Shown here piece by piece: positions 19,301-64,000 of a stretch of DNA of 64,000 bases (position 1 is the stretch's first letter; every line of letters begins with the position of its first letter). The notes under the pieces are model-generated. The model had not been told where the DNA came from. It searched no databases and saw only the letters and a list, made by a program, of their open reading frames with translations. Both the position numbers and the translations under genes were made by a program. The DNA is taken from positions 1,364,001 through 1,428,000 of the forward strand of contig NW_025765559.1 of NCBI RefSeq assembly GCF_003918875.1, read 5' to 3'. Source of the DNA: Haliotis rubra (Eukaryota).

Positions 19301-22300
19301 TGATGCTGTTGCATAAGTCGCGATAATTTCTTTGTCATGTTAATGTAAATTATTTTCATCATTTAATTTTCTGTCTTATGTCGTTTGACATGATGTAATA
19401 TCAGTTCAGTTTTCTTTTCTGTATTTTCATAATTTTTTTATCTTCTCTCAACTTTAGTTCTTTTCTGTTTGTACATGATGCACCTGTTTATTTCATTTGT
19501 CGTAGGACTCGACACTGAGGCGACAAACTCCCATGTCCATTATCTCCTTTACTGAGGTGAGCAAGCTCAGCATGTGGAGCTCAGTGGTAGAGAACCCCAG
19601 AACACCTTAACCCTCCCCCTGAAGTTCATATTAATGTGTGCACTGCTCATCTTGGAGCTGTAGAGGGAGCAGGCGGTTGGGAGAAAATAGCAGTTGACAA
19701 GAAAACTGTCATTGTACAGGAGACCTTAACCCTCACCCTGAAGTTCACATTAATGTGTGACAAGAAAACTGTCATTGTACAGGAGACCTTAACCCTCACC
19801 CTGAAGTTCACATTAATGTGTGACAAGAAAACTGTCATTGTACAGGAGACCTTAACCCTCACCCTGAAGTTCACATTGATGTGTGACAAGAAAACTGTCA
19901 TTGTACAGGAGACCTTAACCCTCACCCTGAAGTTCACATTAATGTGTGACAAGAAAACTGTCATTGTAGAGGAGACCTTACACTTTACCCACCCCCTCAC
20001 CCCCTGAAGTTCACATTAATGTGTGACAAGAAAAACTGTCATTGTACAGGAGACCTTAACCCTCACCCTGAAGTTCACATTAATGTGTGACAAGAAAACT
20101 GTCATTGTACAGGAGACCTTAACCCTCACCCTGAAGTTCACATTAATGTGTGACAAGAAAACTGTCATTGTACAGGAGACCTTAACCCTCACCCTGAAGT
20201 TCACATTAATGTGTGACAAGAAAACTGTCATTGTACAGGAGACCTTAACCCTCACCCTGAAGTTCACATTGATGTGTGACAAGAAAACTGTCATTGTACA
20301 GGAGACCTTAACCTTCACCCTGAAGTTCACATTAATGTGTGACAAGAAAACTGTCATTGTACAGGAGACCTTAACCCTCACCCTGAAGTTCACATTGATG
20401 TGTGACAGGAGACCTAACCCCAGAAAACTGTCAAGAAAACTGGAGGAGACCTTAACCCTCACCCTGAAGTTCACATTAATGTGTGACAAGAAAACTCTCA
20501 TTGTACAGGAGACCTTTAACCCTCACCCTGAAGTTCACATTAATGTGTGACAAGAAAACTGTCATTGTACAGGATACCTTAACCCTCCACCTGAAGTTCA
20601 CATTAATGTGTGACAAGAAAACTGTCATTGTACAGGAGACCTTAACCCTCACCCTGAAGTTCACATTGATGTGTGACAAGAAACTGTCATTGTACAGGAG
20701 ACCTTAACCCTCACCCTGAAGTTCACATTAATGTGTGACAAGAAAACTGTCATTGTACAGGAGACCTTAACCCTCACCCTGAAGTTCACATTAATGTGTG
20801 ACAAGAAAACTGTCATTGTACAGGAGACCTTAACCCTCACCCTGAAGTTCACATTAATGTGTGACAAGAAAACTGTCATTGTAGAGAATACAACTTTAAG
20901 TTGTCTGTCACAGGTTCCTGTTATTTCCTGGTTGCCCTCCTCCAGCTCACTCTCATCCCCTTCCATTGGAGACTACTGGTAACCTCACCCTCCCTTGCTG
21001 ATAGCAGCATTACACCAAACTTTTAATCCCTGATTCCACCCACTCATTTATGTACTATGAGTTTTTGAGTGTGTGTCCCAATACTCTGTTTTTCATTTTG
21101 GCCTGTTGTCATGATAACCAGGCTTGCTGGCTTCACCATCCATGGTGATACACACATATGACCTGTGAGAAGTAACCCAACCAACTTGATCTCTAATCAA
21201 ATTTTCACTTTCACTGCATGAAGTTCTAGCATTACAGAATGTTTTAATGAGTGCTTTTGGTTTGACCGTCTCAGTTGAGTTTGTGGTTGCTTGTTAGGCA
21301 TTACACCTCTTGCTACAGAGGATTTGTTGTTAGAAGTTTGCATGGAAATCTTTTGTTATGTTCTCTACAAGGAGAAAGTCAGTGTTTACAAGCTGGGTCC
21401 ACATCTCCAGATCCCTGTGGTTGGTTGTGAGGGGATCAGGAGGGCTAGCTCTTCTGACTGCATGTCAATGCATGACATGTTTGCCTGGTACAGATTCAGT
21501 TACTGATAGATGACAGTAAAAATACTGCTGACTGGCAGTTTACAACCTTCACTCACATCATTCACTTCAGACTGACTGACTGGTTTTACGCCGCTTTTAG
21601 CAATATTCCAGCAACATCACGGCGGGGGACACCAGAAATGGGCTTAACACATTGTACCCATGTGGTGATTCGAACCTGGGGCAGTCAGCGCTTTAACCAC
21701 TAGGCTACCCCATCACCCCATTCACTTCAGAAGGAGTAGCAGGATGTTTTGTGTTTGCCTTGAGTTGAATGCTCTCAATGCTGTTCACAAAATGGAGTTT
21801 TGATTGTGGTTGTCAATCCTAATATCTAGATGTGAAGATGCTTCCTGATATTCAGCTTTCATCACCATGACCATCATTACAGTAGTCTTGCTCCTCAACA
21901 GAATTGTCAACCTTTACTGTTCTGTTACTCTGTGTTTTGCACCCACAATAAGCTCCCTTGCAACAATGCATTGTAAATACTTCAGTAGTGAGTTAAAAGG
22001 TGTTACTCCTGATTCACTGAACTTTTCAAAGTGACAGATTATATCCAGGGAGTTTCACAATGTGTGGATCTATTTGTCACCCAGATGGGTGATGAATCTT
22101 CCTCTTGAAGTGATATAAGCTACCCGTTGCTTATTCAGAGCTCAAATTGCACCACAGCAACTTTTGAAAATAGGGCCAAGCTAAGACTGTTCCCTGATGC
22201 ACTTTTTTCACTTTCACTTGGAATTATCTAAAACTGGCACGTGTGATTGTTACAAGTATCAGTTTAGAATAGCAAGCCTTGTTGAGTCTGCATCTAAAAC

Positions 22301-29078: not shown

Positions 29079-30609
29079 GACATGCACACAGACTTGGTTT
29101 TTGGCCTCTGTTGAATAGATGACTATCACCCAGGTTGATTTCTCAAAGCTACACGAAACTGGACTTGCAACTTGTAAAATGGCATGCATGACTTGTTAGT
29201 GAGGTACCTATTGTGCGACTTGTGATAGAGGTAGAGACTGAAGGTGCATGGTGAGACTGGTGGATTTAGCGAGCTGGTGTTCATCAGGATGTAAGGCATC
29301 CTTTCTACCGAGCATGATGAGTTCCAGATGGACAGCATGGTACATCCATCTCACCCAGTGATATGCATGAAGGTTTTGATGGACAGGACTCTGGAGGTCA
29401 CATTTGTGCACAGTTGAGTGTCATGCACAATTACTTGACTGTCATGAGTACCATTGGCAGATTTTAGAATCCTACATTGCATGCAGAGGACTTTGTTGCT
29501 TTCATCAGTTTCATGTGTGGTGATACACAACGTTGAGAATTCACGTCATGTCATTGAAGCATTCTACATTACTAACACCAGCTGACAGTTAAACTGCATT
29601 ATGTTGTCCAGTTTAGCTGCGTGACATATGAGAAGGTTTGGTCGGAAATTGATGAGAAAATTGCTTGTTTGTGGATACTCCTCAACCTGGAGATACCATT
29701 CATTAATCTCTGATCCACCTGTTCAAAGTTTCTGGGTTCATTTACAGTCCAAAGAAGTCACCTTTTCTTGTATGACAAGCTGCACTATAGAACGATATAC
29801 AATGCGTTGTGTAAAGTGCACATATCAACATTCTTAGCGTTCATAGAAAATGATCAAATGAAGTTGCAAACAATGGTGTAATTTGAAATTCTGTATCATG
29901 CTGAAGTCCATTTCTGGACCGAAATAGCCAGTTAAGATATGTTGCTCAATTCTATTTTCTTAAACAATTCCATGGTAAACCTAATAAAGAAACATTAGCT
30001 TAAACATACCAGTCAATTTGTGTACCATGGGGTATTGCTGGAAACCTTGAGATGTGACAAAACTTGTCATACTAGCGAGAAAGAACCCTATCCTCAACAC
30101 TGCAGGCATCTTCCTCGTGTAGCATTGGGGTGTGTTGGGATTTGGACACTGCCTGGAGGGATATTACATGTGGGAAACCCTGCAACAGTGCTAAGTCTCA
30201 TCTTTAATGTTGTGCCAATTTTGTATTTATTTGTACTTAGAAATCTTGTACTATATCTCTATGCATATACCACATGCGTTTTAAAGTGTACAAAATCTGG
30301 CGTTAAAATTCACCAGCTGTTGTCTCTTCCTGTATAGTGTCTGCTTGTCCCTGAGATCCCTGATGAAGGGTGAGGTTTAAGTAATGGGCAGAGTTTAGGG
30401 GACATTGTCATGTCTGATAGGGGCATGGTCTTGACTGTTGTGGACATGTTCTTGTTTGATATCCTTATATGATAGGGAAGTGCTGTTGTCTGATGATGAG
30501 AATGTGTTCTTGTCTGACCACTGGGACATTTTCTTGTCTGGTGAGGATGTGTTTGAGCCTGAGGACTGAACAGGTTCAAAAGATAATGAGAACATATATC
30601 TTTTCATAG

Positions 30610-31253
30610 GGACATGTCCATATCTTATGATAGGGACATGTTCATATCTTATGAGGGGACCAGTCCATATCTTATAAGGGGAACCAGTTCATATCTTATG
30701 TGGGGGACATGTCCATATCTTGTGAGGGGGACATGTCCATATCTTATGAGGGGGACATGTCCATATCTTATGAGGGGGACATGTCCATATCTTATGAGGG
30801 GGACATGTCCATATCTTATGAGGGGGACCTGTCCATATCTTATGAGGGGGACCTGTCCATATCTTATGAGGGGGACCTGTCCATATCTTATGAGGGGGAC
30901 CTGTCCATATCTTATGAGGGGGACATGTCCATATCTTATGAGGGGGACATGTCCATATCTTATGTGGGGGACATGTCCATATCTTGTGAGGGGGACATGT
31001 CCATATCTTATGAGGGGGACATGTCCATATCTTATGAGGGGGACCTGTCCATATCTTATGAGGGGGACATGTCCATATCTTATGAGGGGGACATGTCCAT
31101 ATCTTATGAGGGGGACATGTCCATATCTTATGTGGGGGACATGTCCATATCTTATGAGGGGGACCTGTCCATATCTTATGAGGGGGACAGGTTCATATCT
31201 TATGAGGGGGACATGTCCATATCTTATGAGGGGGACAGGTTCATATCTTATGA
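30610..31253. repeat. 24-bp minisatellite (gagggggacatgtccatatcttat)n, about 26 units
   Basis: Direct inspection. Confidence 0.95.
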
Positions 31254-31677: not shown

Positions 31678-33214
31678 ACCAGGGAATCTGCCTAAACATG
31701 TCCACCCCTCCCCACACCCACCAGGGAATCTGCCTAAACATGTCCACCCCTCCCCACATCCACCAGGGAATCAGCCTAAACATGTCCACCCCTCCCCACA
31801 CCCACCAGGGAATCTGCCTAAACATGTCCACCCCTCCCCACACCCACCACCAGGAATCTGCCTAAACATGTCCACCCTCCCCCACACCCACCAGGGAATC
31901 AGCCTTAAACATGTCCACCCCTCCCCACACCCACCAGGGAATCAGCCTAAACTTGTCCACCCCTCCCCACACCCACCAGGGAATCGGCCTAAACATGTCC
32001 ACCCTCCCCACACCCACCAGGGAATCAGCTCTAAACATGTCCACCCCCTCCCCACATCCACCAGGGAATCGCCTAGACATGTCCACCCTCCCCACACCCA
32101 CCAGGGAATCGGCCTAAACATGTCCACCCCTCCCCACACCCACCAGGGAATCAGCCTAGACATGTCCACCCCTCCCACACCCACCAGGGAATCAGCCTAA
32201 ACATGTCCACCCCTCCCACATCCACCAGGGAATCGGCCTAAACATGTCCACCCCCTCCCCACACCCACCAGGGAATCGCCTAAACATGTCCACCCCCTCC
32301 CTAAACATGTCCACCCCTCCTCCCCACACCCACCAGGGAATCTGCCTAAACATGTCCACCCTCCCCACACCCACCAGGAATCGCCTAAACATGTCCAACC
32401 CCTCCCCACATCCACCAGGGAATCGGCCTAAACATGTCCACCCCTCCCACCAGAGAATCTGCTCTAAACATGTCCACCCCTCCCCACACCCACCAGGGAA
32501 TCAGCCTAAACTTGTCCACCCCCTCCCACACCCACCAGGAATCTGCCTAAACATGTCCACCCCTCCCCACATCCACCAGGGAATCAGCCTAAACTTGTCC
32601 ACCCCTCTCCCACACCCACCAGGAATCGGGCCTAAACATGTCCATGCCTCCCCACACCCACCAGGGAATCGGCCTAAACATGTCCACCCCCTCCCCACAC
32701 CCACCAGGGAATCGGCCTAAACATGTCCACCCCTCTCCCACATCCACCAGGGAATCGCCTAAACATGTCCACCCCCTCCCCACACCACCAGGGAATCAGC
32801 CTAAACATGTCCACCCCTCCCCACACCCACCAGGAATCAGCCTAAACATGTCCACCCCTCCCCACACCCACCAGGAATCGGCCTAAACATGTCCACCCCT
32901 CCCCACACCCACCAGGGAATCGGGCCTAAACATGTCCACCCCTCCCACCCACACCCACCAGGGAATCGGCCTAAACATGTCCACCCCTCCCACCAGAGAA
33001 TCGGCCTAAACATGTCCACCCCTCCCACAAACATGTCCACATGTCCACCCCTCCCCACCAGAGAATCGGCCTAAACATGTCCACCCCTCCCCACACCCAC
33101 CAGGAATTGGCCTAAACATGTCCACCCCTCCCCACCAGAGAATCTGCCTAAACATGTCCACCCCTCCCCACCAGAGAATCTGCCTAAACATGTCCACCCC
33201 TCCCCACACCCACC
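31678..33214. repeat. About 44-45-bp C-rich minisatellite (cctaaacatgtccacccctccccacacccaccagggaatc..)n
   Basis: Direct inspection; the minus strand carries G-runs compatible with G-quadruplexes. Confidence 0.95.
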
Positions 33215-47932: not shown

Positions 47933-48275
47933 GACCGCCTCCGTGGTGTAGTGGTTAGAGCGTCCGCCCGGAGAGCGGAAGGTCGCGGGTTCGATCCCCG
48001 ACCGCGTCATACCAAAAGACGTTAAAATATGGTACTTGTTGGTCCCTGCCTGGCGCTCGGCATTATTGGGAACAACAAGGACTGGTCGGCTCGGAGTCAG
48101 TATAATGTGTCTGAGTGGGGTATTCATGCTTCGGGGCGGTGGGGTAGTCTAGTGGTTAAAGCGTTGGCTCGTCACGCCGAAGACCCGGGTTCGAATCCCC
48201 ACATGGGTACAATGAGTGAAGCCCATTTTTGGTGTCCCCCTCCGTGATATTGCTGGAATATTGCTAAAAGCGGCG
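47933..48275 (+). mobile_element. Chimeric SINE: family C 5' half fused to a tail-less family B copy
   Basis: 47933-48131 repeats the family C head; 48132-48275 is family B; bounded by tctatttcaccgc. Confidence 0.75.
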
Positions 48276-48534: not shown

Positions 48535-48699
48535 GGGCGGCGGGCTAGCCTAGTGGTTAAAGCGTTCGCTCGTCACGCCGAAGACCCGGGTTCGATTCCC
48601 CACATGGGTACAATGTGTGAAGCCTATTTCTGGTGTCCCTCGCCCTGATATTGCTGGAATATTGCTAAAAGCGGCGTAAAACTAAACTCACTCACTCAC
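48535..48699 (+). mobile_element. SINE family B
   Basis: Full length, TSD tctttgtcttaa. Confidence 0.9.
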
Positions 48700-48713
48700 T
48701 CTTTGTCTTAAAG

Positions 48714-48969
48714 GTGAGTGAGTGAGTTAATATTTAACGTCACATCGGTAATATCTCAGCCATATCATGACGAGAACAATTTATTTCATATCACTATTAA
48801 AAACGATAACTTGAGAACATAAAAACCTGTCATCGAAGGACAGTAAACCAACTAGAATATCACAGTATCAAGACATAACACTAGCATCTCCCTTTAAAAT
48901 TGCATTTCAAATAAGGACAATACAATATCAAAAATGGCTATAGGTCGCCAACAACTGAAGGTAGATCAC
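48714..48969 (-). mobile_element. Family D: truncated LINE 3' end with (CTCA)n tail
   Basis: Matches 50120-50367; TSD ttgtcttaaa. Confidence 0.75.
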
Positions 48970-50367: not shown

Positions 50368-50477
50368 TCTGTTCGGGACATATCCACAATACATATCTCA
50401 CCAGTATTTGTCCATGAGAGAACACACCACGGCTACATTGCCCAATGAAACAGATTGTGTTCATGGTGTTGAGTGTA

Positions 50478-52700
50478 CAACAATATCACGGTGACAAGTA
50501 TATGCTGAGGGTTCTGTGTACACCGATATCATGGTGACAAGTATATACTTGAGGGTTATGTGTACACCGATATCATGGTGACAAGTATATACTTGAGGGT
50601 TATGTGTACACCGATATCATGGTGACAAGTATATACTTGAGGGTTATGTGTACACCGATATCATGGTGACAAGTATATGTTGAGGGTTATGTGTACACCG
50701 ATATCATGGTGACAAGTATATGTTGAGGGTTATGTGTACACCGATATCATGGTGACAAGTATATGTTGAGGGTTCTGTGTACACCGATATCATGGTGACA
50801 AGGATATGTTGAGGGTTCTATGTACACCGATATCATGGTGACAAGTATATGTTGAGGGTTCTGTGTACACCGATATCATGGTGACAAGGATATGTTGAGG
50901 GTTCTGTGTACACCGATATCATGGTGACAAGTATATGTTGAGGGTTCTGTGTACACCGATATCATGGTGACAAGTATATGTTGAGGGTTCTGTGTACACC
51001 GATATCATGGTGACAAGTATATGTTGAGGGTTATGTGTACACCGATATCATGGTGACAAGTATATACTTGAGGGTTATGTGTACACCGATATCATGGTGA
51101 CAAGTATATGTTGAGGGTTATGTGTACACCGATATCATGGTGACAAGTATATGTTGAGGGTTATGTGTACACCGATATCATGGTGACAAGTATATACTTG
51201 AGGGTTCTCCGTACACCGATATCATGGTGACAAGTATATACTTGAGGGTTATGTGTACACCGATATCATGGTGACAAGTATATAATTGAGGGTTCTGTGT
51301 ACACCAATATCATGGTGACAAGTATATACTTGAGGGTCTGTGTACACCATATCATGGTGTACTTGAGGGTTCTCGATACCCATATCATGGTGACAAGTAT
51401 ATACTTGAGGGTTCTGTGTACACCGATATCATGGTGACAAGTATATACTTGAGGGTTTGTGTACACCGATATCATGGTGACAAGTATATACTTGAGGGTT
51501 CTGTGTACACCGATATCATGGTGACAAGTATATACTTGAGGGTTCTGTGTACACCGATATCATGGTGACAAGTATATACTTGAGGGTTATGTGTACACCG
51601 ATATCATGGTGACAAGTATATACTTGAGGGTTATGTGTACACCGATATCATGGTGACAAGTATATACTTGAGGGTTATGTGTACACCGATATCATGGTGA
51701 CAAGTATATACTTGAGGGTTCTGTGTACACCGATATCATGGTGACAAGTATATACTTGAGGGTTTGGGTACACCGATATCATGGTGACAAGTATATACTT
51801 GAGGGTTCTGTGTACACCGATATCATGGTGACAAGTATATACTTGAGGGTTATGTGTACACCGATATCATGGTGACAAGTATATACTTGAGGGTTATGTG
51901 TACACCGATATCATGGTGACAAGTATATACTTGAGGGTTCTGTGTACACCGATATCATGGTGACAAGTATATACTTGAGGGTTATGTGTACACCGATATC
52001 ATGGTGACAAGTATATACTTGAGGGTTCTGTGTACACCCATATCATGGTGACAAGTATATACTTGAGGGTTTGGGTACACAGATATCATGGTGACAAGTA
52101 TATACTTGTGGGTTTGGGTACACAGATATCATGGTGACAAGTATATACTTGAGGGTTCTGTGTACACCGATATCATGGTGACAAGTATATACTTGAGGGT
52201 TCTGTGTACACCGATATCATGGTGACAAGTATATACTTGAGGGTTCTGTGTACACCGATATCATGGTGACAAGTATATACTTGAGGGTTTTGGTACACAG
52301 ATATCATGGTGACAAGTATATACTTGAGGGTTCTGTGTACACCGATATCATGGTGACAAGTATATACTTGAGGGTTATGTGTACACCGATATCATGGTGA
52401 CAAGTATATACTTGAGGGTTTGGGTACACAGATATCATGGTGACAAGTATATACTTGAGGGTTCTGTGTACACCGATATCACGGTGACAAGTATATACTT
52501 GAGGGTTCTGTGTACACCGATATCATGGTGACAAGTATATACTTGAGGGTTCTGTGTACACCGATATCACGGTGACAAGTATATACTTGAGGGTTCTGTG
52601 TACACCGATATCATGGTGACAAGTATATACTTGAGGGTTCTGTGTACACTGATATCACGGTGACAAGAATATATTTTAGGGTTTTGTGTACAACGATATC
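50478..52700. repeat. 43-44-bp satellite (gagggttctgtgtacaccgatatcatggtgacaagtatatactt)n, about 50 units
   Basis: Direct inspection. Confidence 0.96.
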
Positions 52701-53479
52701 TTTTTCTTTTTTTCATAATCACTCCCTTTTTGACATGGGTTATGGTGTGTCTTTGAAGTCGGGTTGATCGTTGATTACAATATTAGTAATATGATTTGTC
52801 CGATCCAGACTGGAATGTCGCAAGCAGGTGAGTATTAATCACTATCGAAAAGTGGCGAAACCCGGCGTTTGTAAATCATAAACACCACGTCGCCAACCAG
52901 TGGAAGTCATCATCTATGGAGTTCGCCACCCCAAAACTTAATAAGTTTTATAACTTTTGCGTAATGTTGGCGAAATGTAAACACCTTGTCACAAATGGGA
53001 TAACGTAGAGCTTTCTGATATTTTATCAGTGAAAGTACGTTAATGTGTTCCAGGCCGTGAATCAATATGCGGTGACTAAATGTACAAACAAAGCCTCGGG
53101 AAGCAAATACACCGTCATTACACGAACATCCCATCAGAGGACAACAGTAATTACATATCACCACGCAAACGTTCACCAACATTCAGGACAGGACATAATA
53201 AAACTGAAATGGCGGCGATATCGACTGGTTCCGCATGGAATGCAGTATACTAAGCAGACACATATCACATGTAACTCGATCCAGCTTTTAACGAACATTT
53301 ATGAATAACGTTCGCAGTGGCCCCATCGCTCGCTTGTGTGGGTAGTTCCTGACCTCATTGCGGAGAGATACAGGTCACGTCGACTGCTCAAGCATTACAT
53401 GGGCGTGTGAAGAGTCTCGGTATAGAGACTGGCTTACATCAGATTACGTGAGGCAACCATTGCGGTTATTTGATGGAGG

Positions 53480-54637
53480 ATGTGGTGGGTTTGTCTGACA
53501 CTGACACTGAGTGTATGTAACGGGGCATCCATTCACGATGCGAGACGTTTACAAAGTTACCTGTTCTCAAACTACACATCTGAGCACAGGCCACTGAACA
53601 ACCAGAGCGAAACAGTCAAGGTGTCAGCCAGTGTTAACCTGTTAGACATAATTGACTTTGACGATGTGAAACAACAGTTCATATGTAATGCTCTGTTCAT
53701 TATAGACTGGAAGGATGAGTTCTTGGTCTGGGATCCTGAGGACTTTGGTGGGATCAAATATTTCACGTTCAACAATGGCTACAAGGCATGGTTTCCGAGC
53801 CTAACGGTGACCAACACACTGGAAAAGCGAGACGTTTTCAAGGAAGATACTCAGCGCATGACAGTTTTCAGCAACGGGACCGTGCTGTGGTTTCCGTCCG
53901 CCATCTTGAAGACGTCTTGTCCACTCAATGTCCGCACTTTCCCCTTTGACGTCCAGGAATGTTCCATATACCTTATGGCCGTGCATTACACGGCCAAAGA
54001 AGTGGAATTTGTGACTGGAAGTGATAAAGTCCACGTTGATCGATTTCAAAGAAGCGACCAGTGGGATTTACTGGACACCAGTTTATCATCAATCAGGACT
54101 GGTGATGTGGACAAGTGGCGTATTACCCTCAGATTTCAGCGTCGACCGTTGTTCTACGTCCTCAACGTCCTTATCCCCATCGTCATCCTGTCCATTCTCA
54201 ACATGGCCGTCTTTGCTGTCCCTGTTGAATCTGGTGAAAAGCTCTCCTTTGCCGTCACAGTGCTTTTGTCACTGATCGTCTTCATGACGTTTGTAAGTGA
54301 ACTCATCCCGAAGACGTCGACAGGGATATCCATGTTGACGGGGTATCTAACGACGGTGACAGCTTCTAGTGCCGTCAACGTCATGTTGATCATTGTTGTT
54401 CTCATCCTTCACAACAAACCGAATAAAGAAGAGATTCCAAGGTGTTTACAGAAACTTGTTTCCTTAGCTCGTAAGGTATCTTGCAGGAAGATTTATCCCT
54501 TGGACCCCACGACCATTGACAGGTCGGTGGGCTGGAAGGATGTTGCGGATGCACTGGAATATTTCTGTCTGAGAGTGCTTCTGGTTATTTTGATCATATA
54601 CACAACCATGTTCTTCGTCGGACTAACGGTGTTCTGA
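53480..54637 (+). CDS. Intronless Cys-loop ligand-gated ion channel, nAChR-like non-alpha subunit (385 aa)
   Basis: Signal peptide, RP.NN, WKDEFLVWDP, Cys loop CPLNVRTFPFDVQEC, four TM helices, GEKL at the start of M2; no vicinal Cys. Confidence 0.93.
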   Translation: MWWVCLTLTLSVCNGASIHDARRLQSYLFSNYTSEHRPLNNQSETVKVSASVNLLDIIDFDDVKQQFICNALFIIDWKDEFLVWDPEDFGGIKYFTFNNGYKAWFPSLTVTNTLEKRDVFKEDTQRMTVFSNGTVLWFPSAILKTSCPLNVRTFPFDVQECSIYLMAVHYTAKEVEFVTGSDKVHVDRFQRSDQWDLLDTSLSSIRTGDVDKWRITLRFQRRPLFYVLNVLIPIVILSILNMAVFAVPVESGEKLSFAVTVLLSLIVFMTFVSELIPKTSTGISMLTGYLTTVTASSAVNVMLIIVVLILHNKPNKEEIPRCLQKLVSLARKVSCRKIYPLDPTTIDRSVGWKDVADALEYFCLRVLLVILIIYTTMFFVGLTVF

Positions 54638-54794
54638 GATTGGCAGATATTTTAACTAAACTCTAAACATTCTACCTTTGACATTCAGGTAAGAAATGGT
54701 AATGGTCTTGGACATTATAACTATTTTTCCTTTTTCAATAATTACAGAATCTTTCATTTTACTCTTTTGTAACAAGCTGTTTCAATATTTCACG

Positions 54795-55031
54795 CAGTTG
54801 TTGGCAATATATAGCCTGTTTTTATATTGTATTGTCATCTATAGTTAAACTGTTTTAGATCTAATTACTTGTTTTAAATTCGAATCTGTGATAATCTACT
54901 TATTTTACTGTCCTTCGTTGACAGTATTTTTTACAATTTACCATTAATTACTATGCATAAAATTAATTGTTCTCGTCACGATATGGCTAAAATATTGCCG
55001 ATGTGACGTTAAATTTTAACTCAGGCACTCA
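54795..55031 (+). mobile_element. Family D LINE 3' fragment in the 3' region of channel copy 1
   Basis: 14-bp TSD ttcaatatttcacg; empty site in the paralog at about 60110. Confidence 0.8.
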
Positions 55032-55334
55032 TTCAATATTTCACGTAACATGATGATCTGTATACAGTGTTTATGATGCGGCTGGTCGAAATAAAATTGT
55101 ACAAAAAAGTCTGCTTGATTTCTTCCGCAAACAATTTAATCATTGATGATACATCGTTAGGCAACTTTCGGACACTGTAATAGTCTTAGCATTTGTATCA
55201 AAACAAGGACTTTCATGCATGGAAAAGTTGGAACCAGTAATGTATTACTCTGACGTGTTCAGAAATGAATAACGGGTACCGACCATGATCATAAAAAAGT
55301 AACGGGAGTACATGGCATTTGTTGGACCCAAAGA

Positions 55335-56359
55335 CAGTTTAAGTAAACTTAGGCTCAGTATTATTCGTTACACTGCTGTACTGAGTCTAACAAAACCTTA
55401 TGGAAGGTCGCGTCAGGAAACCTTTGAGCGACCTATGACCATCCAATCAAACGAGAGACGACGGAACGGATTTAACCAATCAGACAACGGCTACTATTTA
55501 GGGTTCGGCGGGACTTTCAAAATGGATTTACTCTTCCCCACACTCCGGCACAGCGATGACTTAACATAACATCACTGCCAAAGGCTAATTTGCATATCAC
55601 GTGACCGGACTTTTCTCTTGTTTGTAATCAAACGCGCATATTATTAATAAGAAGAGAATGGACTCACGAAAGCTTTACGGCGCTCTCTTCATTATGTTTT
55701 ACATTGTTACATATATATTTTTCTACAACTACGACAGTAAGGTTTATGACAGTACATATTTAGATATCAAACTGGCTGCATCGTTTGCTCTCCATCAGCT
55801 TCGATGACAGCACGTGAAGCCGTACAACCTATGTAAACAAAGAATCGCTACGCAAATCGAAATAGTGTTACATGTGTTTGGATATTTTCTCAGCTTGCCG
55901 CATGGAACTCTGGGTAGAAGAGTGACTCTTCCGCGGTCGCCAACACTGATCTCACAACAAATGAAAACCCGCATAAAACACAGATATATGACCTGCGGAA
56001 TATGCTCTTTTTGGGTTTCTGTTGACATGGTTATAATAAGCTAATATTTCCGCAAGCTGACATCCTTGAATACTGACAAAATGCCATTTTCAGCGACTGT
56101 TTACTCACGTTTGTGGTGTGCTCCATGTGCATCACTCGGAAGCGATCGTACGGAAAATAGCATTCGGAATCGTTCGGGTACAAAACTTTTTCGAGGTAAA
56201 AGTTCAAAAGGTATGTGCGAATGTCAACTTTCGCGATTTGGTAAGCTGTGTTCTGATTGGTCAATTGAAAAGGTTACCTCACGCACCTTCCACAAGGTTT
56301 TGTTAGACTCAGTATAGCAATGTAACAAATAATACTGACCCTAAGTTTACTTAGACATG
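55335..56359. mobile_element. Non-autonomous DNA transposon, about 70-bp TIRs, 9-bp TSD
   Basis: TIR cagtttaagtaaacttaggctcagtatt...; flanks acccaaaga / acacaaaga. Confidence 0.85.
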
Positions 56360-56416
56360 ACACAAAGAAAAAAATTACAACATTTTTAATGATTGTTCGC
56401 ATACTCTCATATATAA

Positions 56417-56497
56417 CAGTGGTGGAGCCAATGGGGGGTTCAGGGGGTTCGAACCCCCCTGAACCCCATCCATTCAAAATTCCTGGATCCGCCCATG
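56417..56497. mobile_element. Short MITE remnant (ggatccgccc-type ends)
   Basis: cagtggtggagcca...tggatccgcccatg with an internal ggggttcagggggttcgaacccccctgaacccc palindrome. Confidence 0.5.
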
Positions 56498-57241
56498 TGC
56501 AATAGTTTAGTGTACAAGGCTCTGTAAGATCTCTCAACATGGAATCAGTAGATAACAGTTTTACTCTGTCCAGATAGAGTTATACCTACATATTTACTGG
56601 GAGCACCATGTGACAGGTCACGGCATTGTGGTAGTAGTGTAGGTGTTGGTCGTTGTGCCACGGCGCACCTAGCTAGACACCAGCTAGTTGAGGATGGAAC
56701 TTTCTTCTCTTTAATCTCAGGTCCATCGCTTATATCAGTGTATAAAATAGTTTTGAAATGTGGTCTGTCCAAGGATTGGCTGTCCAAAAAATAGACCCGT
56801 CCTGAACAAACACAGCCAGTCCCAAAAACTAAAACAATGAAAAAAATCAACAGATGTTGAAAAGAAAACGAGAAAGAAAACGAAGTTCAACACGAAGTTC
56901 AAACTATATTTTATACACTGCTTTATACTCACCCACCTGACAGCTGTTAAACTGAATCCCACAATGGACGTAGTGTGTGCATTATTATTAAAATAGATAC
57001 TATCTTCCAGGCAACAATACAGACGATGAAACGTGGATGGCGGCGTCATTTTATTGAAACAAATAATGTATGACGTTCAAAGGCACCCCCCACAAACTTC
57101 ACATGTGTACCAATGAGGGAGTAAACGACGAGTGTGACCTCTTGGACGGTCTACTCATGGTCTGAAGAACTTGTCGGAAGCACTCTTACCGCAAGACATC
57201 GCCATTGGTCGACGAGTGCTTGCCCAAGTTCTCTCTTCCAA

Positions 57242-57308
57242 CGGCGGTAGTGTAGCCTAGTGGTTAAAGCGGTCGCTCGTCACGCCGAAGACTCGGATTT
57301 GATTCCCG
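57242..57308 (+). mobile_element. SINE family B head only
   Basis: gtagcctagtggttaaagcggtcgctcgtcacgccgaagac. Confidence 0.7.
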
Positions 57309-58799
57309 ACCCCGAAATCCGCCTGTTCTGTTGTGTGATTACTACAGCTGAGGGCTCGTGCAACTGCTGGAGTAAATTATCCAGCATTGAGCTTACGCTG
57401 ACGTTGCTAAGTTGTGAATTGGGACATGGCTCGATGCACGTAAATGCACGCTTTATGACCAGATTTTTCACGTCTGCCGCCAAGACCATGTTCAAACAGC
57501 CCACATATAATTGATGGGCGTATGGCACAACAAGAAACTAAAAAAGAATTACCTCCCACACACACATATTGGCAGTAATGTGTCAGTCAAGTTTCTAATT
57601 TTGTTGATCATATATCCAAGGTCATCTGACACGCATTAGTTCATAAATACATAGAATAAAAATCAAGAGAAAAGACAAAGTTGCACATTTTGTTTAGCAT
57701 GGCCGACAGTGATGGTACAATACAGCGGGGATTAGTAGTTAGTTATTGTAAACTGCCCTTGGCATCAAATATTCATTCTTGCAAATGAACGAAATCGCTT
57801 GCCATGACACAGTCACCGACTTAATGTATTATATTTTGGAGATTGCTGATGGCATGTAAATAACGAGAATACGTCTAAGGCGTATTTTCTTATGTTAAGT
57901 ATTACACCAATATCAGTTTTCATACAATTGTCCTTAACATGCTTACAGGATACATTTCAAGGTTCTGTGTACAGCGATATCACGGTGTTGTTTTGAATAA
58001 TCACTTGGCTGTTTGATATAGGTGATTGTGTGTCTTCGAATATGGACGAGTGTAAATCATAAGTTGCACCATTAGCCCTATGATTTGTCTGAAACAAACT
58101 TGAGTATCACAAGCGGGTGTTCAAAATCACTAACTAACAGTGATGGCAACCTACGTTCCCGAATCGTAAACACTCGCCAATGGGGTAACCTGTGAGCCTT
58201 CCGCTCTCGCATCAGTGAAACAGTAACATCTAGTAATGATGTTTGCCATCTAAAAGATCAATGACAATGTTTTAAAACGTTAATGTGTTCCAAACCGCGA
58301 ATCAATCTGCGATGACTGAATTGTGAACACAACCCCACCAATGGGTAGAATCTAAATACATCCAATTATGTCCTCAGATACTACAAATACACCATTAGAC
58401 CAATTGAGCTGACAAAAAATAACATACCTTCTGTACGTTTTAACTTGAATAGATCATTGGTTTGGTTTGCAAATGGTGCTTCTGGTATCAATGCATACTC
58501 ATATTTTAAGCGACATCAGGTAGTCACAGTAGTGACTTACCACTCATCAAACGTTAATGGCATAACAAAGATGAAATGGAGATGATATCGATTGGTTCTG
58601 AACAATGTAGCTTGTGGACATATGTCCCATGGGACTGGAGACTGTGAATAACTCGGAAGTCACATAGTGGGAAAAAGAAACACTTTCAGAAACGTTTGCA
58701 TTTGACCCGTGTGGGTATTTGCTGACGTCATTGGACTGTCTTGGTGTGTGTGGAGTCTCAAGCTAAGGATTGGCAAGCATCGCTGTATTTTGATGGAGG

Positions 58800-59969
58800 A
58801 TGTGGTGGGTTTGTCTGGTGCTGATGCTGACACTGAGTGTCTCTAACGGGGCATCCATTCACGATGCGAGACGTTTACAAAGTTACCTGTTTTCAAACTA
58901 CACACCTGAGCATAGGCCACTGAACAACCAGAGCGAAACAGTCAAGGTGTCCGCCATTGTTAACCTGTTAGATATAACAGACTTTGACGATGTGAAACAA
59001 CAGTTCATATGTAATGCTCTGTTCACTATAGACTGGAAGGATGAGTTCTTGGTCTGGGATCCTGAGGACTTTGGTGGGATCAAATATTTCACGTTCAACA
59101 ATGGCTATAAGGCATGGTTTCCGAGCATTACGGTCACCAACACACTGGAAAAGCGAGACATTTTCAAGGGAGATACTCAGCGCATGACAGTTTTCAGTAA
59201 CGGCACCGTGCTGTGGTTACCGTCCGCCATCCTGAAGACGTCTTGTCCACTCAATGTCCGCACTTTCCCCTTTGACGTACAGGAATGTTCCATATACCTT
59301 ATGGCCGTGCATTACAAGGTCAAAGAAGTGGAATTTGTGACTGGAAGTGATAACGTCCATGTTGATCGATTTCAAAGAAGCGACCAGTGGGAATTACTGG
59401 ACACCAGTTTATCATCAATCAGGACTGGTAATGTGGACAAGTGGCTTATTACCCTCAGATTTCAGCGTCGATCGTTGTTCTACGTCCTCAACGTCCTCAT
59501 CCCCATCGTCATCCTGTCTATTCTCAACATGGCCGTCTTTGCTGTCCCTGTTGAATCTGGTGAAAAGCTCTCCTTTGCCGTCACAGTGCTTTTGTCTCTA
59601 GTCGTCTTCATGACGTTTGCAAGTGAACTCATCCCGAAGACGTCGACAGGGATGGCTATGTTGACGGTGTATCTAACGACGGTGACAGCTTCTAGTGCCA
59701 TCAACGTCATGTTGACCATTGTTGTTCTGGTCTTTCACAACAAACCGAAACCGAATGAAGAAGAGATTCCAAGGTGTTTACAGAAGCTTGTTTCCTTAGC
59801 TCTTAAGGTATCTTGCAGGAAGATTTATCCCTTTGACATGACCTTCAAAGAGAGCTCGCTTGACTGGAAGGATGTTGCTGATGCACTGGAATATTTTTGT
59901 CTGAGAGTGTTTCTTTTTATTTTGGTTATATACACATTCTCGTTCTTTGTCGCACTAACGGTGTTCTGA
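58800..59969 (+). CDS. Intronless Cys-loop ligand-gated ion channel, nAChR-like non-alpha subunit (389 aa), tandem paralog
   Basis: Collinear and highly similar to 53480-54637, same motifs, intact ORF. Confidence 0.93.
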   Translation: MWWVCLVLMLTLSVSNGASIHDARRLQSYLFSNYTPEHRPLNNQSETVKVSAIVNLLDITDFDDVKQQFICNALFTIDWKDEFLVWDPEDFGGIKYFTFNNGYKAWFPSITVTNTLEKRDIFKGDTQRMTVFSNGTVLWLPSAILKTSCPLNVRTFPFDVQECSIYLMAVHYKVKEVEFVTGSDNVHVDRFQRSDQWELLDTSLSSIRTGNVDKWLITLRFQRRSLFYVLNVLIPIVILSILNMAVFAVPVESGEKLSFAVTVLLSLVVFMTFASELIPKTSTGMAMLTVYLTTVTASSAINVMLTIVVLVFHNKPKPNEEEIPRCLQKLVSLALKVSCRKIYPFDMTFKESSLDWKDVADALEYFCLRVFLFILVIYTFSFFVALTVF

Positions 59970-60663
59970 GATTGGCCGATATTTTAATTATACTCTAAAA
60001 TTTCTACCTTGGACTTTAAGGTAAGAAATGGTAATCGTTTTGAAAATTAAAACTATGTTTCCTTTTTCAATAATTTCAAATTCTTTCATTTAACTATTTT
60101 GTAACCTGTTTCATTTTTCACGTAACATGTTGATCTGCATCCTGTCTGTATGATGCAGTTGATGAAATAAAATACGTACATAAACGTCTGCTTGATTTCT
60201 TCCCCAAACAACCACAGTTTAGTCATGGATGATACATTGTTTGACAACATTTTGAACACATATCTCTTTTAACGGTTCCTTAAAGACATTACAAAATGCA
60301 CCTTGAGTTAAACTAATCGGATATATGATACAGTTGGTCTAAATGTAATTCAAACATAAAAGTGGACAAGATCCTTTTTTGCATGCAACCACAATTTACT
60401 CATGGATAATAAATGGCTTGGAGAATTTGGACAGATGTATCCATTTATCGTTGCTTGATGACATTACAAAACGTTTCCAGGTAAATCTATCAAGGCATCC
60501 AGACAAATCCACCTTTGTAGCAATTGTTTTACATGATACGACTAGTAAATTAGAGAAGTGTAATATGAAAAATTCAGTAACCGGTTTGATGCATGCAAAA
60601 GTGGGAACCAGTAAAGTATTACTCTGACATGTTCAGAAATAAATAAGGGGTACCCACAAAGAA

Positions 60664-60920: not shown

Positions 60921-61238
60921 GAGTGAGTGAGTGAGTTAACATTTATCGTCACATTGGCAATATTTCAGTCATATCGTGACGAGAACAATTAACTTTATAA
61001 ATAGTAATTAATGGTAAATTGTAAAAACCTGTCAACGAAGGACAGTAAAATAACTAGATTATCACAGATTCGAATTTAAAACTAGTAATTAGATCTAAAA
61101 CAGTGTAACTATAGATGACAATACAATATAAAAACAGGCTATATACTGCCAACAACTGAAAGTAGATCACCATACTAAGGACCAAGGGGACTAACAGTAC
61201 ATTTGCTTCCTGCATGGGCTCTAGCTGGATTTACATCA
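60921..61238 (-). mobile_element. Family D LINE 3' fragment
   Basis: Reverse complement of about 50055-50367. Confidence 0.78.
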
Positions 61239-62684: not shown

Positions 62685-64000
62685 AAGTTTCTAATTTTGT
62701 TTGAGTATATATCCAAGGTCATCTGATACGCATTGGTTCATAAATGCATAGAATAGAAACCAAGAGAAAAGACAAAGTTGCACAGCTCGTTCAGCATGGC
62801 CGACAGCCAATGTACAGTACCTCAGGGATCTATAGTGAATCATTGCAATCACCCTTAGAATTAAATATTCATTCAGACAAAGGTTGTCCAAAATCTGCCG
62901 CTTATGACCGGGCTACCAACTAAATGCATTATATTCCGCAGATTGTGGATACGAAGAAATGCCATGTAAATAAGGAGGATGTTATGCACCACTTCTCGTT
63001 GCATTTTCTTATGTTAAGGATGACACCAAGACCAGTTTCCAAGATAATCGTCACTGAAGGGCACACACAATAATACATTTAAGGGTTCTGTGTACAACGA
63101 TATCACTTGGCTGATTGATATGGTAATATGGGTGATTGTGCGTCTTCGAAGATGAACGAATGTGGATGGTTGGTTGAACTATCGGCCATATAATTTGTCT
63201 GATCCACTCTTGAATATGACGAGCAGGTGTTTATAAGTGACTTTCAAACAGTAATGATCCCCAGCGTTTCTGAATCGTAAACACCTCGTCGCTAATGGTG
63301 GAACATGTGAGCGTTCTGCTACCACAAAAATCAATGACAAACTTTTTATGCGTTAATGTGTTCCAAATGTGAATCAATCGGCGGTGATTGAATTGTAAAC
63401 ACAACCCCACAACCGGGTAGTAAATACATATTGATTAGACATCCTATTACGTTGTCAACTACTACAAATACACCACCGGATTTGCACGATGGTGAATATC
63501 TGTCAAAGATTAAGTCGAAAACAGTTATTTACATTTTGAAGTGAATTATTGTGTAACAGTGATTATAAGTGAGTGAGTGAGTTAATATTTAACGTCACAT
63601 CGGCTATATTTCAGCCCTATCGTGACGAGAACAATTTATATCAACATTAAAATCAATAAATTTATAACATAAAAATCTGTCATCAAAGGACAGTAAAACT
63701 ACTAAAGTATCACAGCTCTGAATTTAAAACTAGTACGTTATCATAAAAAGATGTCACTATAGACAACAATACAACAAAAAAACGGGCTATAGATCACCAG
63801 CAACTGAAGGCTGATCACCATACTAGGGACACAATGATTGTAAGCATATATAATACCAGCTAAGAACATACTCTATGTACGTTTTAACCGAAATATGTTA
63901 CAACATATCAGATATAAGACTGATCTGATACAAGAATGCCCTTGGAATTAAATCATTTTATCCGACATCAGGTAACTACTCATCAAATTGTTTATGTTCA
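62685..64000 (+). promoter_or_regulatory. Upstream region of a third channel paralog (CDS expected beyond the window)
   Basis: Collinear with 57588-58560, the upstream region of copy 2. Confidence 0.7.
63569..63830 (-). mobile_element. Family D LINE 3' fragment
   Basis: Imperfect TSD acagtgattataag / acaatgattgtaag. Confidence 0.75.

What the first reader, a model, noticed from the sequence alone, without database searches (positions are those of the whole stretch)
53480..59969. Tandem intronless nAChR-like channels lacking the entire acetylcholine aromatic box
Seen: by-eye alignment to alpha7-type subunits gives loop A WFPSLTVTNT (no Tyr), loop B LMAVHY (no Trp), a short loop C without YxCC..Y, loop D NALFIIDW (no Trp), a very short M3-M4 loop and a retained cation-type GEK at M2. 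Known: molluscs have expanded intronless nAChR-like genes, and cephalopod chemotactile receptors are acetylcholine-insensitive members of this superfamily. Inference: these may be sensory or environmental-ligand cation channels rather than neurotransmitter receptors.
Basis: partly seen in the sequence, partly recalled or inferred. Interest (0 to 1): 0.7.

Follow-up and report, generated by a model that had tools for sequence, protein, structure and literature searches.

The report
Abalone orphan nicotinic-like channel gene pair
Two neighbouring intron-free genes in blacklip abalone encode nicotinic-receptor-like cation-channel subunits that have lost every acetylcholine-binding residue yet are clearly kept by selection; this is real, but it is one more example of a gene expansion already described in molluscs, and a sensory role is untested.

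Summary
Window 53480-54637 and 58800-59969 (+) are intact single-exon genes (385 and 389 aa, 88% identical) with complete Cys-loop receptor domains. Aligned to human alpha7, the box positions W55/Y93/W149 are Leu/Thr/Val. Loop C lacks the Cys-Cys pair and both Tyr. The Cys-loop, GEK, 9' Leu and gating residues are kept, and the M3-M4 loop is 40 aa.

It is not unusual, though. The genome is Haliotis rubra, with at least 107 such single-ORF genes. Of 104 intact ones, 103 lack the loop-C Cys pair and 27 lack the whole box. The pair, with a third paralogue 16 kb downstream, sits in a 33-sequence gastropod-wide clade (Patella, Bulinus, Biomphalaria) in which none keeps the loop-B Trp, so that loss is old.

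The genes are maintained. H. asinina has three orthologues. Between species, omega is 0.21-0.35 overall, 0.10-0.21 in the ligand-binding domain and about 1 in the intracellular loop.

They resemble cephalopod chemotactile receptors (23-26% identity) no more than alpha7 (29%).

Published work (Jiao 2019; MolluscaGenes 2026) already describes this kind of expansion, and this scan has twice reported similar box-less arrays elsewhere in this genome. Verdict: a new member of a known kind. A non-cholinergic ligand is likely; a sensory role is untested.

The parts
53480..54637 (+). Gene A: single-exon CDS, 385 aa, box-less non-alpha nAChR-family subunit
   Evidence: ORF. Pfam PF02931+PF02932. AF2 model pLDDT 89.8 with full pLGIC topology. 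Best PDB matches are nAChRs.
58800..59969 (+). Gene B: single-exon CDS, 389 aa, tandem paralogue of A (88% aa identity; dS 0.12, dN/dS 0.44)
53480..53527 (+). Signal peptide of A (aa 1-16, MWWVCLTLTLSVCNGA)
   Evidence: Hydrophobic N-terminus ahead of the alpha1 helix, which is H18-29 in the model. Inference only; no signal-peptide predictor was run.
53528..54145 (+). Ligand-binding domain of A (aa 17-222). Box equivalents are L72, T111, V168 and G208, with a short loop-C hairpin. The Cys-loop is C147-C161 with FPFD. Clade-specific invariant residues are C69, H169 and W213.
   Evidence: omega 0.10-0.21 between species
54146..54412 (+). M1-M3 of A (aa 223-311). M2 carries G-2', E-1', K0', S2', T6', L9', V13', T16' and E20'. 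The M2-M3 Pro277 is present.
54413..54532 (+). Short intracellular M3-M4 segment of A (aa 312-351, 40 aa), evolving near neutrally (omega 0.75-1.07)
54533..54634 (+). M4 helix of A (aa 352-385)
53290..53479 (+). About 180 bp proximal upstream block conserved in A, paralogue C, the three H. asinina genes and the Logan contig: a candidate core promoter or 5' UTR. No TATA box found.
58690..58799 (+). Upstream region of B: homologous to the block upstream of A but with two deletions (about 30 and 21 bp)
   Evidence: A/B homology at 91% starts only 28 bp before the ATG
55036..55175 (+). Shared 3' block of unit A holding the AATAAA at 55090 (counterpart in unit B at 60113-60259, AATAAA at 60166). 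In A it is separated from the stop codon by a 240-bp repeat insertion at 54795-55034.

Best explanation
These are two intact, selectively maintained, single-exon genes of the blacklip abalone (Haliotis rubra). They encode non-alpha subunits of the nicotinic (cationic Cys-loop) receptor family. With a third paralogue about 16 kb downstream on the opposite strand, they form a small Haliotis-conserved trio. The trio lies inside the known molluscan expansion of intronless, tandemly duplicated nAChR-like genes. Shown: the fold, the Cys-loop, the FPFD motif, the pre-M1 Arg, the M2-M3 Pro and an alpha7-like cation pore (GEK, 9' Leu, 20' Glu) are retained. All five aromatic-box residues and the loop-C Cys-Cys are replaced or deleted, and these replacements are conserved under purifying selection. 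Inferred: the subunits assemble into pentameric cation channels, alone or with each other or other paralogues. Such channels cannot be opened by acetylcholine through the canonical cation-pi site. They are most likely gated by an unidentified non-cholinergic ligand in a small, mostly aliphatic pocket (T111, V168, L/I72, L136, F/L/V/I138) flanked by the clade-specific H169, W213 and C69. I put identity, and real genes without a canonical ACh site, at about 0.9. I put autonomous gating by a non-ACh ligand at about 0.5.
For: Pfam LBD and TM domains. Best sequence and structure matches are nAChRs. The AF2 model has pLDDT 89.8 and full topology. Box positions were read from two independent alignments. 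Pore and gating residues are invariant. There are seven intact copies in three Haliotis genomes or runs. dN/dS is 0.21-0.35 between species, with Fisher p from 1e-10 to 1e-21. The LBD is the most constrained domain, at 0.10-0.21. The substituted residues T111, V168 and G208 are invariant in all seven. At least 107 single-ORF paralogues lie in tandem clusters. 0 of 33 members of the enclosing clade keep the loop-B Trp. The literature describes the same kind of expansion and loss of binding residues (PMC6896357; PMC13174522).
Against: There is no expression, assembly or electrophysiology evidence. A monomer model cannot show the inter-subunit pocket. Orphan relatives such as Alpo4 have resisted all attempts to find an agonist (PMC10338036), so 'ligand-gated' is an assumption drawn from family membership. 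Loss of both binding faces is also what a purely structural subunit would show.
Confidence: 0.75

Rival explanations
1. Accessory (structural) subunits: A, B and C do not bind any agonist themselves. They co-assemble with box-intact alpha-type subunits into ACh-gated heteromers and tune conductance, trafficking or desensitisation, as non-binding positions do in vertebrate heteromeric nAChRs (established knowledge of the family).
For: There is no loop-C Cys pair and neither binding face is usable. The assembly, gating and pore elements are fully conserved. A strongly constrained LBD is also expected for a subunit that must fit its partners.
Against: The 40-aa intracellular loop evolves neutrally, unlike the regulated loops of synaptic subunits. 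Variability among the seven clade members is enriched at pocket-equivalent sites, namely the alpha7 Q57 and L119 equivalents (permutation p 0.02), which is unexpected if the pocket is unused. Clade-specific invariant H169, W213 and C69 next to the pocket suggest a remodelled site, not an abandoned one. About a quarter of 104 paralogues are equally box-less, which is far more than heteromers would need as accessories.
Confidence: 0.2
2. One reading: peripheral chemosensory or environmental-ligand receptors, analogous to cephalopod chemotactile receptors. They would be expressed in tentacles, epipodium or larval sensory cells and gated by external cues such as hydrophobic or biofilm- or alga-derived molecules.
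For: They share traits with CRs: intronless genes, tandem duplication, loss of ACh residues, a short intracellular loop and a cation pore (CR traits as described in PMC13174522 and PMC10338036). The pocket is aliphatic and hydrophobic. The two most variable LBD positions are complementary-face pocket sites.
Against: There are no expression data. They are no closer to CRT1 or CRB1 (26% and 23% identity, Z 24-25) than to alpha7 or muscle subunits (26-29%, Z 32-33). No CR chain is among the 60 best PDB sequence matches. The family is a stable three-gene set in two species with LBD omega of 0.10-0.21, not the fast birth-and-death pattern typical of environmental chemoreceptors. The published CR clade is predominantly cephalopod.
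Confidence: 0.2
3. Decaying retrocopies: non-functional intronless pseudogenes that happen still to be open.
For: Jiao et al. report that more intron-poor than intron-rich nAChR genes have little or no expression. Copy B has deletions in the conserved upstream block. Within-species dN/dS is higher, at 0.44-0.50.
Against: Seven of seven copies are intact over about 385 codons across three Haliotis sources. pN is far below pS (p down to 1e-21). Constraint differs by domain, with LBD 0.1-0.2 against ICD about 1, which only selection on the protein produces. Only 3 of the 107 paralogue loci lacked an ORF of at least 250 aa.
Confidence: 0.03

Closest known systems
Molluscan expansion of intronless, tandemly duplicated nAChR genes (Jiao et al. 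2019, BMC Genomics, PMC6896357)
   Same: Single-exon CDS, tandem arrays, over 100 paralogues per genome, LBD-NTM architecture and widespread loss of ACh-binding residues. In C. gigas only 33 of 132 are alpha-type and only 13 have a complete principal site. Here, at least 107 single-ORF paralogues lie in clusters, and 103 of 104 lack the Cys pair.
   Different: That study covered bivalves, Lottia, Aplysia and Octopus, not Haliotis. This trio is small and conserved between Haliotis species and is not a large recent array.
Divergent molluscan nAChR clades with substituted binding residues and the 'CR-like' clade (MolluscaGenes preprint 2026, PMC13174522)
   Same: The preprint reports clades across gastropods with modified ACh-coordinating positions and GEK-type cation motifs.
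   Different: Which of its 15 clades holds this trio was not determined. The preprint's text does not mention Haliotis.
Cephalopod chemotactile receptors (octopus CRT1, PDB 9e6b; squid CRB1, PDB 8eiz)
   Same: nAChR-derived, intronless, ACh site lost, short intracellular loop, same fold (Z 24.1 and 25.3).
   Different: Identity is 26% and 23%, no higher than to alpha7 (29%) or muscle epsilon (26%). No evidence of shared ancestry beyond the family, of a hydrophobic-ligand response or of sensory expression.
Human alpha7 nAChR (e.g. PDB 8ut1, 8c9x)
   Same: Best sequence match in the PDB (E 7e-46). Z 32.5 with 360 aligned residues. Near-identical M2 pattern (GEK, 9' L, 13' V, 20' E), Cys-loop FPFD and pre-M1 Arg.
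   Different: All box residues (W55, Y93, W149, Y188, Y195) and C190/C191 are absent. Loop C is 5-7 residues shorter. The intracellular loop is 40 aa, far shorter than that of full-length alpha7 (a 502-aa chain).
Alpo4, orphan lophotrochozoan nAChR-like receptor of Alvinella pompejana (PDB 8bx5; PMC10338036)
   Same: A lophotrochozoan nAChR-like homologue without the loop-C Cys pair, unresponsive to ACh and still an orphan. Same fold, Z 26.5.
   Different: Alpo4 keeps the aromatic cage (F103, W159, Y199, Y205, W65), whereas this trio has lost all of it. Identity is only 20%.

Membership tests
[quoted passage not shown] | Extracellular ligand-binding domain (PF02931) followed by a four-helix membrane domain (PF02932) | tested here: met
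   Both domains are well above the Pfam cut-offs in both proteins. The model shows a beta-sandwich plus M1-M4.
[quoted passage not shown] | Signature disulfide loop with 13 intervening residues and an FPFD core | tested here: met
   C147 and C161 with FPFD at 154-157, invariant in the clade.
Cationic nAChR/5-HT3 branch | Cation-type M2 intracellular mouth (G-E-K) with 9' Leu | tested here: met
   G252, E253, K254 and L263 are invariant. The nearest solved structures are all nAChRs, then 5-HT3.
ACh-binding alpha-type nAChR subunit | Vicinal Cys-Cys at the tip of loop C | tested here: not met
   Positions 210/211 are V and D, and there is no CC anywhere in the loop-C region.
ACh-binding alpha-type nAChR subunit | Principal-face aromatics: loop A Tyr, loop B Trp, two loop C Tyr | tested here: not met
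   T111, V168 and G208, with Y195 deleted; identical in all seven clade members.
ACh-binding complementary (non-alpha) nAChR subunit | Loop D Trp (alpha7 W55 equivalent) | tested here: not met
   L72 in A and B; L or I in the clade.
Molluscan intronless tandem nAChR expansion (Jiao 2019) | Mollusc genome, single-exon CDS, tandem arrangement, many paralogues | tested here: met
   Haliotis rubra. Single ORFs. A and B are 5.3 kb apart on the same strand, with C 16 kb further on. At least 107 paralogues lie in clusters.
Cephalopod chemotactile receptors (CR clade) | Phylogenetic placement inside the CR clade | not tested
   No CR sequence could be brought in by reference, so no joint tree was made. 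Indirectly, identity to CRT1 and CRB1 is 26% and 23%, no higher than to alpha7, and no CR chain is in the top 60 PDB sequence matches.
Cephalopod chemotactile receptors (CR clade) | ACh-insensitive channel gated by poorly soluble environmental molecules; expression in sensory epithelium | not testable with these tools
   Needs electrophysiology and expression data.

The most novel reading that the evidence does not exclude
The Haliotis trio is an autonomous cation channel with a rebuilt, conserved orthosteric pocket (aliphatic T111/V168/L72/L136 plus the clade-specific H169, W213 and free C69). It would be gated by a specific non-cholinergic cue, for example a settlement- or food-related environmental molecule, a metal ion or a proton. 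That would be an independent gastropod case of nAChR-to-sensor conversion, parallel to the cephalopod chemotactile receptors, with paralogue specificity tuned at two complementary-face positions (the alpha7 Q57 and L119 equivalents).
Probability: 0.15. Interest if true: 0.65.

Novelty: new member of a known kind. Interest (0 to 1): 0.25.

Why it matters
If one of these box-less channels were de-orphanised, it would show what the very large molluscan nAChR-like expansions are for. It would also show whether turning a neurotransmitter receptor into a sensor happened more than once. This trio is a reasonable candidate for such work because it is small, conserved across abalone species, strongly constrained in the ligand-binding domain and short enough to express easily. 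As a genomic observation, however, it adds little. The phenomenon is published, a quarter of the paralogues examined in this genome share it, and this scan has already reported it twice elsewhere in the genome.

Tried and rejected
1. Reading loop-C box columns straight from the 122-sequence MAFFT alignment proved unreliable because of indels. I replaced it with a scan of the loop-C region for CC and aromatics and a focused alignment.

2. My first labelling of the loop-E positions was off by one. It is corrected.

3. I asked whether W213 could substitute for Y195. Both HMMER and MAFFT place it opposite alpha7 V198, so it was not counted as a box residue.

4. I asked whether the Logan contig DRR299178 (L108) is a transcript, which would be expression evidence. 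Its 837 bp upstream of the ATG is loosely collinear with the H. rubra upstream DNA and shows no splice discontinuity, so it is undecidable.

5. A search for a 5'-UTR splice acceptor or a TATA box upstream found nothing convincing.

6. ARAGORN and Rfam on the tRNA-like repeat heads and the 47-64 kb region found nothing.

7. A joint phylogeny with cephalopod CRs was not done.

8. The large representative-protein search was not run.

9. Complex prediction was not run. A homomer pass would not separate autonomous from accessory subunits.
Full report
WHAT IS THERE. Each carries a complete neurotransmitter-gated channel ligand-binding domain (PF02931, E 4e-43 and 1e-41) and membrane domain (PF02932). 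They are 88% identical in protein. Each CDS runs uninterrupted from a hydrophobic signal peptide to the end of M4. An AlphaFold2 model of copy A, built on a 71-sequence alignment, has mean pLDDT 89.8 and pTM 0.79. It shows the N-terminal helix, the beta-sandwich, M1 (223-246), M2 (253-275), M3 (285-311), a short helix at 321-333 and M4 (352-384). The M3-M4 segment is 40 residues.

THE AROMATIC BOX. The best sequence match among solved structures is human alpha7 (E 7e-46). In that HMMER alignment W55 faces L72, Y93 faces T111, W149 faces V168 and Y188 faces G208. C190/C191 face V210/D211, and Y195 lies in a 5-residue deletion. An independent MAFFT alignment with canonical subunits from other phyla gives the same residues for loops A, B and D and a 7-residue loop-C deletion. 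In the model, loop C is a tight hairpin (strands 195-207 and 210-221). On the complementary face, the alpha7 L109, Q117 and L119 equivalents are T128, L136 and F138. By contrast the Cys-loop (C147-C161, FPFD), the pre-M1 Arg221, the M2-M3 Pro277 and the pore (G-2', E-1', K0', S2', T6', L9', V13', E20') are all retained and invariant.

WHOSE GENOME, AND HOW COMMON IS THIS. A third paralogue (87% identical) lies on the same contig about 16 kb beyond copy B on the minus strand, outside the window. NCBI names it as a Haliotis rubra protein (P0004). The assembly (1.38 Gb, 2855 contigs) gave at least 107 single-ORF nAChR-like matches out of 641 first-look candidates, arranged in tandem clusters on many contigs. 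I fetched all 107; 104 have an intact ORF of at least 250 aa, with a median of 400 aa. In this set 103 of 104 lack a loop-C Cys pair and 100 of 104 lack an aromatic at the Y93 position. Only 67 keep the loop-B Trp, and 27 (26%) lack all four features, exactly like the finding. The set is biased towards relatives of the query and excludes intron-rich canonical subunits. Even so, it shows that complete box loss is ordinary among this genome's intronless nAChR-like genes.

PHYLOGENY. The tree was built with IQ-TREE (LG+G4, quick search) on 119 sequences rooted on fish 5-HT3A; rows shorter than 330 aa were left out. It places A, B, C, three H. asinina proteins and one Logan-assembled Haliotis protein in a fully supported clade. 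That clade sits inside a 33-sequence clade (SH-aLRT 97) with four other H. rubra groups: the contig C502 cluster, the C2134 pair, the L020/L052 pair and the C2160/C2186 cluster. The same clade also holds proteins of Patella vulgata, Bulinus truncatus and Biomphalaria glabrata. None of the 33 has the loop-B Trp, whereas 76 of the other 86 sequences do, and the state changes only 5 times on the tree. So the loss of the cation-pi Trp is an old trait of a gastropod-wide subfamily, not an innovation of this pair. Several joins involve long branches, and the quick method gives no bootstrap, so deep relations inside the 33-clade are uncertain.

ARE THE GENES ALIVE. H. asinina has three orthologues (83-88% identical) within about 47 kb of one chromosome, and a Logan contig from run DRR299178 holds another (82%). 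All seven CDSs are intact. Nei-Gojobori dN/dS is 0.21-0.35 between species and 0.44-0.50 between H. rubra paralogues. Fisher tests of pN against pS give p from 1e-10 to 1e-21 between species. By domain, the ligand-binding domain is the most constrained (0.10-0.21 between species) and M1-M3 follows (0.17-0.28). The 40-aa intracellular segment is indistinguishable from neutral (0.75-1.07). The substituted box residues T111, V168 and G208 are invariant in all seven sequences, and L/I72 varies only conservatively. H169, W213 and a third, unpaired extracellular Cys (C69) are invariant in the clade. H169 and W213 are not found at those positions in other family members. Among ten pocket-equivalent positions chosen from alpha7, variability within the clade is higher than for random sets of LBD positions (permutation p 0.021). 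This is driven by residue 74 (the alpha7 Q57 equivalent; I/T/Y/S/S/Y/D) and residue 138 (the L119 equivalent; F/L/F/L/V/L/I), which are the most variable LBD site and one of the two next most variable. With seven sequences, and two sites doing the work, this is a hint and no more.

THE DUPLICATION. A and B are 91% identical in DNA from 28 bp before the ATG to about 157 bp after the stop. The rest of the 5.3-kb unit is 68-80% identical or interrupted by repeats. A shared block with an AATAAA lies about 200 bp after B's stop. It lies about 450 bp after A's stop, displaced there by a 240-bp repeat insertion. About 180 bp upstream of the ATG is conserved in A, C, the H. asinina genes and the Logan contig, whereas B has two deletions there. 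C and H. asinina P0006 are orthologues (SH-aLRT 99). A/B and P0002/P0005 either duplicated separately in each species or have been homogenised by gene conversion. Within-species dS (0.12-0.21) is below between-species dS (0.22-0.36).

COMPARISON WITH KNOWN SYSTEMS. An all-against-representatives structural search ranks human muscle epsilon (Z 32.9, 26% identity), alpha7 (Z 32.5, 29%) and beta2 (Z 31.5, 25%) first, followed by 5-HT3A (Z 28.0). The orphan annelid receptor Alpo4 scores Z 26.5 (20%), squid CRB1 Z 25.3 (23%) and octopus CRT1 Z 24.1 (26%). The Foldseek top 50 are all nAChRs. The protein therefore has no special similarity to the chemotactile receptors.

Jiao et al. 2019 described 64-217 nAChR genes in molluscs, many of them intronless and in tandem arrays. 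In C. gigas only 13 of 132 have a complete principal ACh site, and the authors already suggested diverse ligands. A 2026 preprint resolves 15 molluscan nAChR clades, including a CR-like clade in gastropods and divergent clades with substituted binding residues. The Alpo4 paper shows how hard such orphans are to de-orphanise. This scan's earlier notes describe a 13-gene array and another pair of box-less intronless genes elsewhere in this same genome, both judged a known kind. My genome-wide census agrees with them.

MECHANISM AND ODDS. Shown: real, selected genes for cation-pore pLGIC subunits without a canonical ACh site on either face. Inferred: pentamer formation and gating by something other than ACh (about 0.5). 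The main alternative is a non-binding structural subunit in ACh-gated heteromers (about 0.2). The sensory or environmental reading is a sub-case with no direct support here (about 0.2 as a statement of biological role). Dead retrocopies are essentially excluded (0.03).

NOT DONE. No joint tree with cephalopod CRs was made, because no CR sequence was available by reference. There is no expression analysis and no inter-subunit pocket model. The large representative-protein search and complex prediction were deliberately not used.

VERDICT. Observation confirmed; interpretation partly supported. This is a new member of a known kind, of modest interest (0.25).

Noticed in passing
window 50473-52700: A 44-bp satellite (about 51 copies, 95% matches) ends about 780 bp upstream of copy A's ATG. 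No copy within 3 mismatches lies anywhere else in the window, including upstream of copy B. This is the subject of another note of this scan (s1-347437).
   Followed up: partly
G000:C669:1439726-1440871 (-), about 16 kb beyond the window's copy B; locus L003: Third paralogue (385 aa, 87% identical; NCBI 'acetylcholine receptor subunit alpha-like [Haliotis rubra]'), orthologous to H. asinina P0006. Its C-terminus differs from that of A and B.
   Followed up: yes
window 54795-55034, 60921-61158 (inverted), 63570-63806 (inverted), 48708-48788: A dispersed repeat of about 240 bp (a GTGAGTGAGTGAGTTAA...ACGTCACATCGG... element) is inserted in the 3' region of copy A. It is also present downstream of copy B and near paralogue C. 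It looks like a MITE or SINE.
   Followed up: no
window 48135-48202, 48536-48603, 57243-57310: tRNA-like repeat heads (GGCGG..GGTTAAAGCG..GGTTCGA.TCCCCAC), probably tRNA-derived SINEs. ARAGORN calls no tRNA and Rfam finds nothing in 47-64 kb.
   Followed up: partly
window 4300-9340: A run of ORFs on the + strand in GC-richer DNA. One has a borderline RT_RNaseH match (7261-8160; E 3.6e-5, 24.3 bits against a cut-off of 24.8). Probably a degraded retroelement.
   Followed up: partly
window 2386-3566, 13764-15577, 19695-20883, 30609-31253, 31678-33207: Several other long tandem arrays (periods 17, 25, 63, 24 and 42 bp). They generate the long low-complexity ORFs listed.
   Followed up: no
window 16249-16409: A run of N (assembly gap or masked stretch). 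Left untouched.
   Followed up: no
window 53480-59969 versus H. asinina loci L109-L111: Synonymous divergence between H. rubra paralogues (0.12-0.21) is lower than between orthologues (0.22-0.36), even though C/P0006 orthology survives on the tree. dS also varies sharply along the gene (A-C: 0.07 in M1-M3, 0.67 in M4). This pattern suggests gene conversion among the paralogues.
   Followed up: partly
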